A DNA stretch of 57,337 bases, filler included, from Platydemus manokwari (Eukaryota): assembly GCA_037951405.1 (NCBI GenBank). It is 6 parts of 6 records of this genome, joined end to end, with 100 filler letters (N's around TTAATTAATTAA, not from the genome) between each part and the next. Parts side by side here need not be neighbours in the genome. Positions count along the whole stretch, not along the records: positions 37,735 to 48,415 come from JBBMOY011113665.1; 5 more parts are not named here. The stretch is one strand, 5' to 3'. Made by a program: the position numbers and the translations under genes. The notes below the pieces were generated by a model that had not been told where the DNA came from, did no database searches, and saw only the letters and a program-made list of their open reading frames with translations. Of the stretch, positions 37,735 through 48,415 are shown one piece after another. How positions within the stretch are numbered: the first letter of the stretch is position 1; the number at the start of each line of letters is the position of its first letter.

Positions 37735-37811
37735 AGTTATTTCAAATGTCCTGCAACTAAAGGAGTCAAGATTACTAAAATCAATTTCAAAAGATTTGTA
37801 TTGAATTCTTT
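37735..37811 (+). repeat. 77-bp contig-terminal direct repeat, left copy
   Basis: agttatttcaaatgtcctgcaactaaaggagtcaagattactaaaatcaatttcaaaagatttgtattgaattcttt is identical to 48339-48415. Confidence 0.97.
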
Positions 37812-38192
37812 AACCATAATTATATTAAAGTTCAATATGTATTATAGATATCGAGAACATTCACTATCTGGAAACCAATCATTGAGGATGCAATGAATTT
37901 TTGTGAAGTCGATGTTTTTGGACACCGATTTGTTGAATCTAATCAAATGATTTGTATTGATTTTATCTTACATAAAATTGTTAATGAAAACCATTCAGAT
38001 AACAAATACAAGCCAATGCGATATGCAAAAGGCTCTCACTTCATGGCTCAGCTTGTTGACTTGTAAATCGAATGCGAATCGATTTGTTTAAATGTTAATA
38101 ATTGTGTTTTGTTTACATTGGAACCAGATATGATATGCTTGTTGTATGATCATGGTGGCGGATCATATTTTGAAAGCAGAGCAATGGAATAA
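37735..38192 (+). pseudogene. 3' half of an F-type lectin (FTP/fucolectin) + PAN/apple-like gene; continues from 47946-48415
   Basis: Intron 37798-37847 is followed by ISRTFTIWKPIIEDAMNFCEVDVFG (FTP C-terminal CEVxVFG), a second short intron, and then ..L*IECESICLNVNNCVLFTLEPDMICLLYD (PAN-like Cys pattern). There is an in-frame TAA at 38064-38066. Confidence 0.7.
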
Positions 38193-39163
38193 GAAATTTG
38201 TTTTGAATTCTATGTGATCGGAAATAGCATAAATTTATTGTATATATTTCATACTTTTATTTTTCAAACCATCGATATAATTCATCGAATGTTTCATTTA
38301 TCTGTTTTTAGAACATTTATTCTCATGTCGAAGTACCTGTTTATTTTATATTTTCATATCTTTTTCACTATTTTATTAATTGATATAAATGTTTTGATTT
38401 TTATTGTGTTGAATAAATGTATTTCATTCTCATAATTTCATATCGCGTTAAATAAATATTGCATTCTTGTTTTATTTTTCATTTAATTTTTAATTTTATT
38501 AAATAATATAAAATATAATTTGATTTTTTTTAAAATTATAGTTATATTGCATGAATATTTTATATTTTAACACAGCGTCAAAATTAATATATTTTTTGAA
38601 CTCCTCTAAAATGTCATTTCCATTATTTCATCTGAAACGGCATAATTTCATAGCATTCTATTAAGTTAATCGAATTTCTGGCAATCATAAAGACAGTTTG
38701 TTTAAGTCACCATATTTCTTGAAAATACAAACATTATCTCCATTCTTTTTTAATTTTAGTTTGTATGTAGAAATAATTTTACTTACTTCAGTTTGGCAAA
38801 ACTAAAGATCTCCATAGTCAGTCAAATTAGAATGTATTGAAACGAATTTCTTTAATGAAAAGTTTAAATTTTAAAAAAATACAACTAAAAAAGTTACTAT
38901 TATTTAACCATTTAATATATAAAAAATATCTAAATATAAATTTACAAAAAAATCCATTTATCTAAATAACTTAAATAATTTTCAAATTTCTTATATTAAA
39001 CAATTTTCATTTTCATTTTTGTTGTACTTATTGTTAAAAAATTATTTTATTAAAAGTATTATTTGTAATATTTTTTGTAAAAAATTATAAGTACTAATAT
39101 ATTTAATGAATAAAAATTTTAAAATAAAAACAAAAACAAAATTATCAAAAAGAAAATTATAAT

Positions 39164-44149: not shown

Positions 44150-46680
44150 GTGGAAAGTCTTTAAATCATTCTGAATTATATTATATTGGGATATGTTTTC
44201 AATTTATAAAGCTTAGTATAAAAATCTGGATCTTTGAAGTAAATAAATTATTTCTCTGTTAATATTATTTCTTGCGATATAACTAGAGTTTTTCATTTAG
44301 TTTATACTTTAGTTGTCACATTTAATAAAAATCAAAAGTGAAGGATATATATAATGTGTTGGATCAAGATTTCACTCTTCGATATACTTATCAATAAATT
44401 TTTCAGCCAGGATTGAGTAGTTCGTTAAAGTTTATAACATTTAACATTTATTTCGAACAATTTCTATTTATTAATTCTCTTTATAATAATATGGGGTTAA
44501 AAATTTTTTTGAAGAAAATGAAGCTTCATTATATGTTTCCAAGCAAATAATATGTCATTATGAGCATATATCCCCTCTTTTGTAATATTATGGGTGCCTG
44601 CAACATCCAACTCCTTTGAGCTTATAGAAACTTCTCTATTGATTCTGTAAAATTTCTTCCTTTAATTATGATATTTTAATGTGCTTATTTCTTCAAAGAA
44701 ATCGCTGTGACTTTTTAAACAATAGATTTTGGTGAAATAACAAATGTGTAATGAACAAAGCAAGTGAGAAGTGGGAGGTATAATACTTTTCTATGTTAAT
44801 AGATGAAACAGATAAGAAAAATCTGTCAAAATACGAACATTTGAGAAACGATATAAATTTATGAGTTCGGACTTGCGAGTTCGGGACCATAGCCTCGGAC
44901 TTTTGATTTTCGAGGTTGTGGTTTCGGACTCGTTGGTTTGGACTTGTACTTTTGAGGTCATATATTTGTAGTTGGGTTGGAATCTGTGGATCTTTATTAA
45001 CATGTGTTTTGAAAGTTTTGAGTTCGGACTTGTGAGTTTGAGACTGTAACCTCGGAATTGTTTTATATCTTTTCCGGGTAATGATCTCAGACTTGTGTTT
45101 TGTAGATGGGACTTTGTAGATATGAAGACTGCCAAAATATAATCAATTTCGAAACAACAAGAACTACAAGTCAACAAGAAACCTTATTAGCTACCTTATT
45201 AGGACTCTGAATATAAGTCAATTTTTCTTTATCACATTAAATGCAAGATGTTGCATTTTTAAAATTTATTAAAATTTCTGTTAATTAATTAATCTGTTAA
45301 TTTTACATCTACATTTGTTTTTTTAATTACTCTTGTTAATTTTTTATTTAGATCTACAATATAAGTGATAAAATCATATTCAGCTTGATCACTATAAAAT
45401 TAAAAATATTTAGACTTTACTAATTATGGATAATTTGATTTTAAATATATGCCAATTAAAAGTAGTTTTTGATTATTATTATATATGCTTCATAAAGTAC
45501 ATATCTGCATAAAGTACAAATGGAACTTTATTCCAATAATAATAATTTTTAAACTAACAATAATCTACTTTTGAAAATAGTGCTTTTGTTTCTTTAAAAT
45601 CTTGACATAATATTTTATGTTCATTTAATGAATTTAATGATCTTTAAGAATTTAAACATTTTAAGCATATCAAATTCGAATGATTATTATTATCTTTATT
45701 TGAAAATATGTTCATATTTCGACAAAGAACATAATGATTTTCAAATAATAATAAATTATATTGTCTATCTACTATTGATGGTTTTGGATTGAAATGTTCA
45801 AAGTAAATATGAGTTAAATCTTTATTTTCATTTACTCCAAAAACATTTATACTTAAATTATTCTTTTTATTAAATTTCTTAATGTCTTCAATAGTCATTG
45901 GAAAATTAATATCATTTAAATTTAATTCATTCATAAAAGGAGTATATTTACTTACCCTTTCTGAATGTTTATTAGCCGGATGTAAATATACTAAAACGGA
46001 ATATGTAAAACACATTTTTTCATTATTTCTTATATTTACAATATATGGAGATTTAAAAGGTATCATAGCATAAGTTTCACCGACTATTGATTGATATTTA
46101 TAAATATTTATTCTAAGAAAATTTATCTTTTATCATGTATCCAACCAGATTCACGCCCTTCATATTCTTGAATAAAACTATTAATATTCACAAGATGAGA
46201 AATAACAGAATATTCAATATTATTTACAATTATTATTTGCTCAGGTTGAGAATAAAATACTTTATTTATTTTCTTTGAGTGATCAGTTTCATAATGGAAA
46301 AATGATTCTTTTTTAGATAGAAATCAATTTTATTTCCAAGAAAATTAAAATAATTCTCTAATATACTAACTATTTCACCCCTAAAACTATAAACATCAGT
46401 TTCTGTTTCTTCTAATGTCTTAGTTAAAGATATTTGACTTTTTAAAAATGCCTGACATTCATAATCAAAGTTTGTATATAGTCTTTTAAATTTCTTTTCT
46501 AAGTTATTCATTTCATTTTATCTTGCTATTTCATCTACTATTTGATAACTAAGTAAATTAGTCATATCAGAATACACTTCGTTTTTATGCTTGGGTTTAT
46601 ATGAGATATTTGTGCTGTTTTTGTTTAAAAGTATCTATTTCATCTTTTACACAAAAATACAATTTTGGGTTCGTTCATTT
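44150..46680 (-). mobile_element. Polinton/Maverick-type protein-primed DNA polymerase B relic, fragmented
   Basis: EYEGRESGW..RINIYKYQSIVGETY, VNIRNNEKMCFTYSVLVYLHP..RVSKY..INFPM..IKKF..NNLSINVFG..LLL..HYVL..CLKCL (45644-46170). Downstream lie LLFKKSQRFL, KEGIYAH and ILAEKF..NLDPTHY (44340-44730), which resemble the polB FxDSxRF, KGxYPY and LDPAHY motifs. Confidence 0.8.
44860..45120. repeat. Array of about 8 degenerate YTCGGACTTG motifs interrupting the polB relic
   Basis: ttcggacttg, ctcggacttt, ttcggactcg, ttggacttg, ttcggacttg, ctcggaattg, ctcagacttg and tgggactttg within ~260 bp. Confidence 0.7.
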
Positions 46681-47945
46681 TTATATTTAGTTTTTTAATT
46701 AGCTTTTATTATTTATGTATTTTTTTGACTATTTTTTTAATAATAAGGTAGTGAGTAAATGGTTAGTTAAATCCATTTACATTGTTTTATAAATTGATTG
46801 ATTGCGAAATGTGCAATTTGGGGACTGGGTGGGGTATGGGGGATAGAAAAATTGAGATTTTTATTGTTAATGATTTCTTGGTTTGGGTTGCTGGATTAAA
46901 CTAGCCCTTTACTCACTACTTGAATAGTTTTAATTGAAGATAGTCAATTTTCTCAAATTATATTTAATAAAGGTATTGCTAAGAGTTTTCTGTCTCTATT
47001 TTTACCAAATGCGGAAATCCAGAAAACTAATAATCAATAATTGGAAACAATAAAGCAAATAGGTCAAAAGCAACCAGTGTTTTGTCAAATAATTAAACAA
47101 ATCAAATATTCAATGTTATTCCAACTGCACTATTTGTTTTTGAAGTTTATTATCTTTTCAAAAAATAAAAAAAAAGTTTTTCTTTTATCCTATTTGCCTT
47201 TTGTTAAAAGAATATATTTTAGATTTAATTTCATGAAACAATACCTTAAGTATTTCGATTGAAGATTAACATAATAATCGATGTGGTATTGAAAAGATTA
47301 TTATAATAACCGGAGTATTTTCATCAATCAAAATTTAAATATAGCTCTGTCAAACAAACGAACATTCAGCGGATGAACTTTAAATAATTAAAAATTTGGG
47401 ACAATCTTGCGATCAATAACATCAATAATATTTACAGAAATGATATTTATTAAAAAACTGAACTAATTCGCCAATCAATTTTTTAACAAACATAAAGTAT
47501 TTGTTTATATAATCACGTTACTCCAACAAATCTTTTTCCAAATTTTCAAAGATTTAGAGCTGCCATATTCATAATTATTTGGTAAAATTATTTCGCACCA
47601 ATCACATTTCAACAATAAATGAGTCAAATTTTCTGTTGTTGTGTTGTTTTCAACATTTAAATAAAACCTGATAATAGTCAACATGGGATAGAGCTTTGAA
47701 TAAATTTCTCTACAAAGATTAGAGACAATTTAAACTTTTCTTTGTTGTAAAGTTTAATTTTCTCTCTGATTGGTTCAAATTGAAAATCTCGGCAGTTTTT
47801 TAAAAATGAAATAAATAATATTTTGTCATTACAATTAGTCAATTCAAATGTTGATTTATAGATTTTTTTATTTGATTTCAGAGTTGTGGGCGCAAAATGC
47901 GAAGATTTTTGCAACTATAAAAAATGTTATATTTTATCTACTAAG

Positions 47946-48415
47946 TTACTCTTTTATCAAGAAAAAGACCTACATTTGGTTCAAAACATCATGCTAGTAA
48001 TATACCAAGTAGAGCTGTTGATGGTAATTATAACGGTATTCATGATAAAGGCAACCTCTTGAATTAAGCATTCAGTAATTTCTCTAATTTGAAAAGGTTC
48101 TTGCTTTCACAGCATGCCTACAAATAAAATTAAATGGTGGCTAGTGATTCTGGATGCTCTTTCAGTACTCATAAAAGTTGACATTTACATTAGATTGGAT
48201 AGAGAAAGTTTGTTATATTTGGATTGAAATAATTAAAATTAATAAAATGTAGCTGGTCAAACTAAAAAACTATCATTCTTTGGTAGTCATGACAAAATCT
48301 CTGCATTTTCTCCCAACTTGTTGAATGTTTATAATGTTAGTTATTTCAAATGTCCTGCAACTAAAGGAGTCAAGATTACTAAAATCAATTTCAAAAGATT
48401 TGTATTGAATTCTTT
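47946..48415 (+). pseudogene. 5' half of the F-type lectin + PAN gene (continues at 37812)
   Basis: LLSRKRPTFGSKHHASNIPSRAVDGNYNGIHDK|GSCFHSMPTNKIKWWLVILD..KVDIYIRLDRE|TGQ..YFKCPATKGVKITKINFKRF|. AVDGN, C.H and WW.V.L are FTP-domain motifs. Introns are short and one needs a GC donor. Confidence 0.75.
48339..48415 (+). repeat. 77-bp contig-terminal direct repeat, right copy
   Basis: Identical to 37735-37811. Confidence 0.97.

What the first reader, a model, noticed from the sequence alone, without database searches (positions are those of the whole stretch)
37735..48415. 10,604-bp candidate circular nuclear-type DNA (contig with an exact 77-bp end overlap)
Seen: the first and last 77 bp of this contig are identical, and none of the other three complete contigs shows this. 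Established: 77 is a standard de Bruijn k-mer size (e.g. SPAdes), and a k-length terminal overlap is how a self-looping graph edge is written out. Inference: the molecule is a closed circle or a collapsed head-to-tail tandem unit. It looks like host chromosomal DNA (spliceosomal introns, old transposon relics) and has no intact replicase, integrase or capsid gene. If it is a circle, it would be an amplified or excised extrachromosomal circle or gene-sized minichromosome (as in programmed DNA elimination/amplification or polydnavirus-like segments), not an autonomous virus or plasmid.
Basis: partly seen in the sequence, partly recalled or inferred. Interest (0 to 1): 0.8.

Follow-up and report, generated by a model that had tools for sequence, protein, structure and literature searches.

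The report
Assembly loop of AT-rich eukaryotic DNA
The contig really does end with the 77 bases it starts with. It is ordinary-looking AT-rich eukaryotic nuclear DNA (one intact double-RING gene, a broken lectin-like gene, transposon relics), and the sequence alone cannot tell a true circle from a collapsed tandem repeat.

Summary
Bases 37735-37811 equal 48339-48415 exactly, giving a 10,604-bp unit with no other long repeat. The content is eukaryotic nuclear-type DNA at 25% GC. A lectin-like gene with three short GT..AG introns reads seamlessly across the junction but has an in-frame stop. There is a frameshifted, truncated retroelement integrase and several small repeats. No replicase, capsid, tRNA, Rfam RNA or telomere repeat was found. 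It belongs to a small, unnamed family found only on short AT-rich metagenome and SRA contigs (26 hits among 1.84 billion representatives). A 77-bp overlap, equal to a default SPAdes k, shows that the assembler closed a loop. It does not show what the molecule is. I rank a chromosomal head-to-tail array first (about 0.4). A true extrachromosomal circle and a single-copy interval between two lectin paralogues sharing the 77-mer follow at about 0.2 each. Nothing supports a polydnavirus-like segment, plasmid or virus. Interest is low to moderate. Reads, contig coverage or the assembly graph would settle it.

The parts
37735..37811 (.). 5' copy of the 77-bp terminal overlap. It consists of the last 63 nt of lectin-like exon 4 plus the first 14 nt of the next intron.
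   Evidence: Exact identity with 48339-48415. Exon/intron assignment from the splice model.
48339..48415 (.). 3' copy of the 77-bp terminal overlap.
39164..40681 (-). Intact intronless ORF of 505 codons (ATG to TAA) for a protein with two RING fingers and long helical regions. It is the only intact gene on the unit.
   Evidence: ORF list. The chance of 516 stop-free codons at this base composition is about 1e-20. Pfam zf-RING_2 E 2.6e-6 and zf-C3HC4 E 1.2e-5 at residues 7-49. 26 distant relatives, about ten of them 514-576 aa with the same layout. Sixteen invariant columns (M1, 12 Cys, 1 His, 1 Asp, 1 Ile), nearly all in the two fingers. AlphaFold model pLDDT 64.6, both RINGs 80-93.
47946..48035 (+). 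Lectin-like gene, exon 2 of my model (contains the 'AVDGN' motif). The 5' exon and ATG were not found.
   Evidence: Splice model. The resemblance to F-type lectin / FTP domains is by eye and from memory only. No Pfam or PDB hit for single exons.
48097..48207 (+). Lectin-like gene, exon 3, preceded by a 61-nt GT..AG intron (48036-48096).
48253..48401 (+). Lectin-like gene, exon 4, preceded by a 45-nt GT..AG intron (48208-48252). Its last 63 nt lie in the 77-mer.
37887..38189 (+). Lectin-like gene, last exon, after an 89-nt (or 50-nt) GT..AG intron starting at 37798. It holds the end of the lectin-like domain and a PAN/apple-like module. An in-frame TAA at 38064-38066 interrupts it, so this is probably a pseudogene.
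   Evidence: Splice model and translation. Pfam PAN_1 E 0.0026 and PAN_3 E 0.012 for 38067-38189, both below the gathering score.
42230..43178 (-). Relic of an LTR-retroelement integrase. The zinc-binding part (42763-42906) and catalytic core (42434-42865) lie in different frames. No RT or gag lies upstream. The region is richer in GC (33-38%) than its surroundings.
   Evidence: Pfam rve E 5.2e-15. Integrase_H2C2 E 6.8e-5. PDB hits to Ty3 and retroviral integrases. Relatives of 54-71% identity on small ENA metagenome contigs. GC profile.
41203..41675 (+). Possible RNase H / RT-connection relic of another retroelement, on the opposite strand and broken over three frames.
   Evidence: By eye only (a 'FIVMTDAS'-type motif). 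No Pfam or PDB support. Low confidence.
45647..46129 (-). 161-codon stop-free stretch, significantly longer than chance allows. It has no detectable relatives and may be a relic of a protein-primed PolB element (memory only).
   Evidence: No hits.
46741..46926 (.). MITE-like unit: 35-nt inverted repeats (83% complementary) 116 nt apart.
44855..45059 (.). Two copies of a repeat spaced about 157 bp apart (48 nt aligned, 81% identity). It sits in a GC-richer island where two minus-strand frames are open without any family match.

Best explanation
The contig is a closed loop in a k=77 de Bruijn assembly graph. It comes from AT-rich eukaryotic (probably metazoan) nuclear DNA. Most likely the 10,604-bp unit sits in the chromosome as two or more near-identical head-to-tail copies, that is a gene-bearing tandem array or macrosatellite-like duplication, which the assembler collapsed into one unit written out with a k-length overlap. 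Each unit carries one intact intronless gene for a double-RING, probable E3 ubiquitin-ligase protein. It also carries a lectin-like gene with an internal stop codon, degenerate retroelement pieces and small repeats. Shown: the overlap, the gene content, and the absence of replicon or virus genes. Inferred: the tandem arrangement, the E3 ligase activity, and that the amplified cargo of consequence is the RING gene.
For: The terminal overlap is exactly 77 bp, equal to a default SPAdes k. From established assembler behaviour, this is how a cycle in the graph is written. The lectin-like gene reads seamlessly through the junction, in frame and in domain order, across three GT..AG introns. The two ends are therefore truly adjacent in at least some molecules. 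The content is typical nuclear DNA: low coding density, a frameshifted and truncated integrase, a MITE-like repeat, and no tRNA or Rfam RNA. No replicase, capsid or partition gene was found in any open stretch of 50 aa or more that I scanned, and the longest were all scanned. There is no match in IMG/VR, phage or plasmid collections. There are no internal long repeats, so the loop is not an LTR-element collapse. The RING ORF is intact and its zinc ligands are conserved across a family. Gene-bearing tandem units of 3-12 kb are a known kind in animal genomes, for example the D4Z4/DUX4 and RS447/USP17 macrosatellites (own knowledge).
Against: No read depth, graph or long-read information was available, so the copy number and the head-to-tail arrangement are not shown. 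For an isolated cycle the assembler's cut point is arbitrary, yet here it falls in a lectin exon. Lectin exons make up only about 6% of the unit, and that position fits the paralogue-repeat model better. A tandem array and circles excised from it can also coexist.
Confidence: 0.4

Rival explanations
1. It is a true extrachromosomal circle of nuclear origin (eccDNA or amplicon) of 10,604 bp. It would be abundant enough to assemble as an isolated cycle, possibly excised from or coexisting with a chromosomal copy or array.
For: Exact k-length overlap and a gene that is continuous across the junction. No flanking sequence is attached to the loop in this contig. Circles are known to arise from tandem or repeat-flanked chromosomal segments (own knowledge).
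Against: No replication or segregation function was found. The content of a pseudogene, transposon relics and long AT-rich spacers gives no reason for stable maintenance. Abundant stable circles of ordinary nuclear DNA are much rarer than tandem duplications. Nothing in the sequence separates this reading from an array.
Confidence: 0.2
2. It is a single-copy linear interval lying between two paralogous lectin genes in direct orientation. Those genes share a maximal exact repeat of 77 bp, so the interval forms a loop edge at one branching graph vertex. There is neither a circle nor an array.
For: The loop closes inside the lectin-like gene: 63 of the 77 nt are exon and the rest is the splice-donor region. 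That is where paralogues would retain identity. The piece holds the 3' part of a lectin gene at one end and the 5' part at the other. The 3' part carries a stop codon, while the 5' part shows none in the exons found. Different states would be natural if these are two different genes.
Against: The shared exact run would have to be exactly 77 bp, with no other run of 77 bp or more between the paralogues. My rough estimate is a chance of order 1-2% per pair at 95% identity (inference, not computed with a tool). Paired 150-bp reads normally let SPAdes thread a 77-bp repeat and emit one linear contig (own knowledge). No second lectin copy lies inside the piece.
Confidence: 0.2
3. It is a packaged or excised segment of a domesticated virus (polydnavirus-like circle), or a programmed-amplification minichromosome.
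For: Only generic resemblance supports this: circular assembly, low coding density, intron-bearing genes, a lectin-like gene and transposon relics. All of these also occur in bracovirus segments (own knowledge).
Against: None of the typical polydnavirus gene families appears in the Pfam scans. GC of 25% is well below known segments, which are about 34-43% (own knowledge). Relatives of the RING gene and of the integrase relic come from metagenome contigs and unlabelled SRA runs, not from known wasp or virus records. There is no IMG/VR match. There are no telomere repeats, and the genetic code is standard, which argues against a ciliate-type nanochromosome.
Confidence: 0.03
4. It is an autonomous plasmid, virus or active mobile element, for example an LTR element whose LTRs collapsed, a Helitron circle, or a Dictyostelium-type nuclear plasmid.
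For: The circular assembly, an integrase-like sequence and a possible PolB-element relic.
Against: The integrase is frameshifted and truncated, with no RT or gag beside it. There is no LTR-like repeat, no Rep/Hel, replicase or capsid domain, and no large inverted repeat: the longest arms are 35 nt. There are no matches in the phage, plasmid or IMG/VR collections.
Confidence: 0.03

Closest known systems
Gene-bearing macrosatellites / tandem gene arrays (e.g. D4Z4 with DUX4, RS447 with USP17) - own knowledge
   Same: The unit is a few kb to about 12 kb. There is one intact intronless ORF per unit, the rest of the unit is non-coding or degenerate, and short-read assemblers collapse such arrays into a loop.
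   Different: The head-to-tail arrangement and copy number are not shown here. The organism is unknown. The ORF encodes a double-RING protein unrelated to those examples.
Isolated cycles in SPAdes-type assembly graphs written with a k-length overlap (the criterion used by circular-contig and plasmid/virus completeness tools) - own knowledge
   Same: The overlap is exact and its length equals a default k (77).
   Different: In most uses the cycle is a plasmid, virus or organelle. Here the content is nuclear-type eukaryotic DNA without replicon genes.
Eukaryotic eccDNA / amplicon circles
   Same: A size of about 10 kb, nuclear gene content, and no need for replicon genes if the circles are continuously regenerated.
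   Different: No physical evidence of circularity. eccDNA populations are usually heterogeneous and of low abundance, so they rarely dominate an assembly.
Polydnavirus (bracovirus/ichnovirus) packaged circles
   Same: A circular map, low coding density, spliced genes and transposon relics. Lectin genes occur in some bracoviruses, although those are C-type.
   Different: No PTP, ankyrin, cystatin, BEN or other hallmark families. GC is far lower. The lectin-like domain here is not C-type. No wasp or virus link appears for any homologue.
TRAF-type (C3HC3D) RING E3 ligases and viral RING proteins (baculovirus CG30/IE2, herpesvirus ICP0)
   Same: The RING fold, with the last ligand in a 'CP-x-D' motif. 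Foldseek's best viral matches cover RING domains only.
   Different: No match reaches E <= 0.001. The two-RING plus long-helix architecture of about 520 aa has only unnamed metagenomic relatives.

Membership tests
Closed assembly-graph cycle (k-length terminal overlap) | Prefix equals suffix exactly, with a length equal to the assembler's k | tested here: met
   77 bp, 100% identical, longest such overlap. That 77 is a SPAdes default k is own knowledge. The assembler actually used is unknown.
Closed assembly-graph cycle (k-length terminal overlap) | The cycle is isolated, with no entry or exit edges at the overlap vertex | not testable with these tools
   Neither the graph nor the other contigs are available.
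Chromosomal tandem array / macrosatellite | Two or more head-to-tail copies in chromosomal DNA, with elevated read depth | not testable with these tools
   No reads, coverage or long reads are available. The 30-mer of the junction is absent from the IMG/VR and JGI metagenome collections.
Chromosomal tandem array / macrosatellite | Kb-sized unit that can carry an intact ORF | tested here: met
   10,604-bp unit with a 505-codon intact ORF.
Extrachromosomal circular DNA | Covalently closed molecule: exonuclease-resistant, with junction-spanning reads and no chromosomal flanks | not testable with these tools
   Needs wet-lab or read-level data.
Polydnavirus packaged segment | Hallmark virulence gene families (PTP, vankyrin, cystatin, BEN, rep, cys-motif and others) | tested here: not met
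   Pfam finds only RING, rve/Integrase_H2C2 and weak PAN.
Polydnavirus packaged segment | Origin in a parasitoid wasp genome, with excision at direct repeat junctions | not testable with these tools
   The source organism is unknown. Homologues are all on unnamed metagenome or SRA contigs.
Ciliate-type gene-sized nanochromosome | Linear molecule capped by telomere repeats, usually with a reassigned stop-codon code | tested here: not met
   No telomere-type repeats. The RING ORF ends at TAA where its relatives end, and it has no in-frame TAA or TAG.
LTR retrotransposon assembled as a loop through its LTRs | One LTR plus a contiguous gag-pol internal region | tested here: not met
   Only about 1 kb of frameshifted integrase is present. 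There is no RT or gag on that strand and no LTR-like repeat.
Autonomous plasmid or virus | Replication initiator or polymerase, or a capsid gene | tested here: not met
   None in any open stretch scanned. No matches in IMG/VR, phage or plasmid collections. A highly spliced gene could have escaped these scans.
RING-type E3 ubiquitin ligase (the 505-aa ORF) | Cross-brace zinc-binding RING domain with conserved Cys/His ligands | tested here: met
   Pfam zf-RING_2 28.0 bits (cut-off 27.3) and zf-C3HC4 25.5 bits (cut-off 21). Ligands are invariant in the family alignment. The domain is modelled confidently. Ligase activity itself was not tested.
F-type lectin / FTP domain (the junction-spanning gene) | Significant match of the domain to the family profile | tested here: inconclusive
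   Single exons give no Pfam or PDB hit. I did not scan the spliced product because it has no reference and I did not type it in. The motif resemblance is by eye only. The PAN/apple part gives weak Pfam hits below the cut-off.

The most novel reading that the evidence does not exclude
The unit is a real, abundant extrachromosomal circle (or an array that sheds circles) in an unsampled AT-rich eukaryote, and it amplifies an intact gene of a lineage-specific double-RING E3-ligase family. That would be a natural case of copy-number amplification of a ubiquitin-ligase gene on a gene-sized nuclear circle.
Probability: 0.15. Interest if true: 0.6.

Novelty: new member of a known kind. Interest (0 to 1): 0.25.

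Why it matters
Most likely this is a cautionary case. A k-length terminal overlap on a eukaryotic contig signals a closed graph loop, not a circular molecule, and pipelines that treat such overlaps as 'complete circular genome' will mislabel nuclear repeats. If read-level data showed high copy number or exonuclease resistance, it would document amplification of a lineage-specific double-RING gene in a poorly sampled AT-rich eukaryote. Separately, the double-RING family is a small uncharacterised protein family that could be described. It is about 520 aa long and has only unnamed environmental relatives, with several paralogues per sample.

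Tried and rejected
- **Origin of the contig.** An exact look-up of the RING protein in public assemblies found nothing on record. A 30-mer from the 77-mer is absent from IMG/VR and JGI metagenomes. Protein-guided scans of IMG/VR and JGI metagenomes found no relatives.
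- **Family alignment as a query.** Alignment A1 was too divergent for the search for related loci.
- **Word-index protein searches.** There were no hits for the RING ORF or for the 161-aa stretch. Only the full HMMER scan found RING relatives.
- **Naming the organism.** Those codes appear in no held paper. My guess at a metazoan, possibly arthropod-like, rests on remembered repeat-protein motifs and is weak.
- **Fold search of the RING model.** Only RING-domain-level similarity was found, with nothing at E <= 0.001.
- **Tool support for the lectin domain, the RNase H relic and the PolB-element relic.** None was found. These remain by-eye calls.
- **Spliced lectin product.** I did not scan it, because it exists only as a script output without a reference and I did not type it into a tool.
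- **Readings rejected.** LTR-element loop, plasmid or virus, ciliate nanochromosome and organelle or nucleomorph fragment. The reasons are transposon relics and spliced genes, no tRNA or rRNA, no telomere repeats, and no replicon genes.
- **Literature.** One search for assembler caveats returned nothing specific, so the de Bruijn-graph reasoning is my own.

Full report
**Observation.** The piece is window 37735-48415: 10,681 bp, no N, GC 25.4%. The GC profile runs from 16% to 38%. The first and last 77 bp are identical, and 77 is the longest prefix that equals a suffix. The non-redundant unit is therefore 10,604 bp. The 77-mer has ordinary complexity, so chance is excluded. No other long repeat exists: the next best self-matches are 48-111 bp at 74-81% identity. 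There are no LTR-like or large inverted terminal repeats; the longest inverted arms are 35 nt. The contig does not look human, and nothing about it required the human-sequence rule. No N runs lie inside it.

**What is encoded: the intact gene.** The only long intact ORF is 39164-40681 on the minus strand, 505 codons from ATG to TAA.
- At this base composition a 516-codon stop-free stretch has a probability of about 1e-20.
- Pfam finds a RING finger at residues 7-49: zf-RING_2 E 2.6e-6 (28.0 bits, cut-off 27.3) and zf-C3HC4 E 1.2e-5.
- The word-index search found no relatives, and the exact sequence is not on record in public assemblies.
- The exhaustive HMMER scan of 1.84 billion representatives found only 26 proteins at E <= 1e-3. 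The best is P0001 (523 aa, E 4.9e-19, 27% identity over residues 1-337).
- About ten hits are 514-576 aa and share the whole layout: an N-terminal RING ending in 'CP-x-D', a helical stretch, a second central RING, then a long helical tail. The alignment has 16 invariant columns (M1, 12 Cys, 1 His, 1 Asp, 1 Ile), nearly all in the two fingers.
- All relatives are unnamed clusters of one or two sequences on short (0.9-2.8 kb) AT-rich (21-38% GC) contigs. These come from Logan SRA assemblies, ENA metagenome assemblies and one JGI metagenome.
- Several paralogues occur in one run: at least three in SRR33002330 and at least two in SRR21676451.
- An AlphaFold model built on the 19-sequence alignment has mean pLDDT 64.6. 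Both RINGs are confident and the remainder is helical.
- Foldseek against viral and PDB libraries gave nothing at E <= 0.001. The best matches are RING-only similarities to baculovirus CG30 and herpesvirus ICP0.

I read this as a lineage-specific double-RING protein, probably an E3 ubiquitin ligase. The activity is inferred.

**What is encoded: the junction-spanning gene.** On the plus strand, open segments in shifting frames can be joined by canonical GT..AG introns of 61, 45 and 89 (or 50) nt.
- The exons are 47946-48035, 48097-48207, 48253-48401 and 37887-38189.
- The spliced reading is open throughout, except for one in-frame TAA at 38064-38066.
- Exons are 30-34% GC and introns 16-30%.
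- By eye, and from my memory of the family consensus, the first about 125 residues look like an F-type lectin/FTP or related galactose-binding-like domain.
- The last part gives weak Pfam hits to PAN/apple modules: PAN_1 E 0.0026 and PAN_3 E 0.012, both below the cut-off.
- Single exons give no Pfam or PDB hits.
- I did not scan the spliced product, because it has no reference and I did not type it in.
- The TAA lies inside the PAN-like module. TAA is a genuine stop in this genome, because the RING ORF ends at TAA where its relatives end. The lectin-like gene is therefore probably a pseudogene.
- I found no 5' exon or start codon.

The 77-mer consists of the last 63 nt of exon 4 plus 14 nt of the following intron. 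The gene therefore runs seamlessly through the junction.

**What is encoded: relics and the rest.**
- On the minus strand, 42230-43178 holds an integrase relic. The Integrase_H2C2 part (42763-42906, E 6.8e-5) and the rve core (42434-42865, E 5.2e-15) are in different frames.
- This relic matches Ty3 and retroviral integrases in the PDB. It has relatives of 54-71% identity on tiny ENA metagenome contigs.
- No RT or gag lies upstream of it.
- A possible RNase H relic lies on the opposite strand at 41203-41675. This is a by-eye call only, with no tool support.
- A 161-codon open stretch (45647-46129, minus strand) is longer than chance allows but has no detectable relatives. From memory it resembles the N-terminal region of proteins of metazoan protein-primed PolB elements.
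- There is a MITE-like inverted repeat at 46741-46926, and a two-copy repeat about 157 bp apart at 44855-45059.
- No tRNA, no Rfam family and no telomere-type repeats were found.
- No replicase, capsid or partition domain appears in any stretch I scanned.
- There is no DNA similarity to the phage or plasmid collections, and nothing in IMG/VR.

I described the relics only.

**What the overlap means.** From established assembler behaviour (own knowledge), a contig whose ends share exactly k bases is a cycle in the de Bruijn graph, and 77 is the last default k of SPAdes for 150-nt reads. Three physical situations produce such a cycle.

(a) A chromosomal head-to-tail array. With many copies, the flank edges are pruned as low-coverage and the cut point is arbitrary. 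With two copies, a path through the unit edge and the short junction edge also ends with a k-length overlap.

(b) A true circle.

(c) A single-copy interval between two direct repeats whose maximal exact identity is exactly k, so that the interval starts and ends at one branching vertex.

The sequence itself gives two opposing hints.
- The cut lies in a lectin exon. Lectin exons are about 6% of the unit, so this is unlikely for an arbitrary cut. It is expected if lectin paralogues elsewhere share this 77-mer. The gene half at the contig start carries a stop codon, while the half at the contig end shows none.
- Against that, model (c) needs the shared run to be exactly 77 bp with no other shared run of 77 bp or more. 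My rough estimate is 1-2% per paralogue pair at about 95% identity. A 77-bp repeat is also normally threaded by 150-nt paired reads.

These hints roughly cancel, which leaves priors. Tandem duplications of ordinary nuclear DNA are much commoner than abundant stable circles. My ranking is: tandem array 0.4, true circle 0.2, paralogue-bounded single copy 0.2, polydnavirus-like segment or minichromosome 0.03, autonomous element 0.03, and the remainder for other assembly artefacts.

**Comparison with known kinds.** The best analogue is a gene-bearing macrosatellite, a kb-sized unit with one intact intronless ORF. The array itself is not shown here.
- The polydnavirus comparison fails on the testable feature, because none of the hallmark gene families is present. 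It gains nothing from homologues, all of which are environmental and unnamed.
- The ciliate nanochromosome comparison fails on telomeres and on the genetic code.
- LTR-loop, plasmid and virus readings fail on gene content and repeats.

**Source organism.** This is unknown. Relatives of the RING gene and of the integrase occur only in unnamed metagenome or SRA contigs, and their accession codes are in no held paper. Short GT..AG introns, retroelement relics and remembered repeat-protein motifs (one at the 3' end of L003) point weakly to a small AT-rich metazoan.

**Verdict.** Circularity is not established and cannot be from sequence alone.

Noticed in passing
window 39164-40681 (-); relatives P0001-P0027, loci L001-L004, L007-L011: This is a small, unnamed family of proteins of about 510-580 aa with two RING fingers (the first ending 'CP-x-D') separated and followed by long helices. 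It has only 26 hits among 1.84 billion representatives, all on short AT-rich environmental or SRA contigs, with several paralogues per sample. In the window protein and in P0001 the second finger lacks the His ligand.
   Followed up: partly
window 38064-38066: An in-frame TAA lies inside the PAN/apple-like module of the lectin-like gene. The rest of the spliced reading is open, so the gene is probably a recent pseudogene.
   Followed up: partly
window 45647-46129 (-): This 161-codon stop-free stretch has no detectable relatives or Pfam domain. From memory it resembles the N-terminal part of metazoan PolB-element proteins, but no polymerase domain follows it.
   Followed up: partly
window 44696-45183 (-): In this GC-richer island (34%) two overlapping minus-strand frames stay open for 149 and 130 codons. 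It contains a two-copy repeat about 157 bp apart and has no family match. It may be a SINE-like or other non-coding repeat.
   Followed up: no
window 46741-46926: A MITE-like structure: 35-nt inverted repeats (83% complementary) flank 116 nt.
   Followed up: no
window 40860-40967 and 41122-41231: A direct repeat of about 110 bp (74% identity) lies 180-550 bp upstream of the RING ORF start. It could be a duplicated promoter region or a small repeat element.
   Followed up: no
window 42235-43234: The integrase relic is markedly richer in GC (33-38%) than the 16-30% of its surroundings. This suggests the insertion has not yet decayed to the host's base composition.
   Followed up: no
L003:2480-2599: Downstream of the RING-family gene on this metagenome contig is an open reading fragment with a 'CYICG' motif. 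I remember that motif from repeat proteins of arthropods and cnidarians. It is a weak hint to the host lineage of the family.
   Followed up: no
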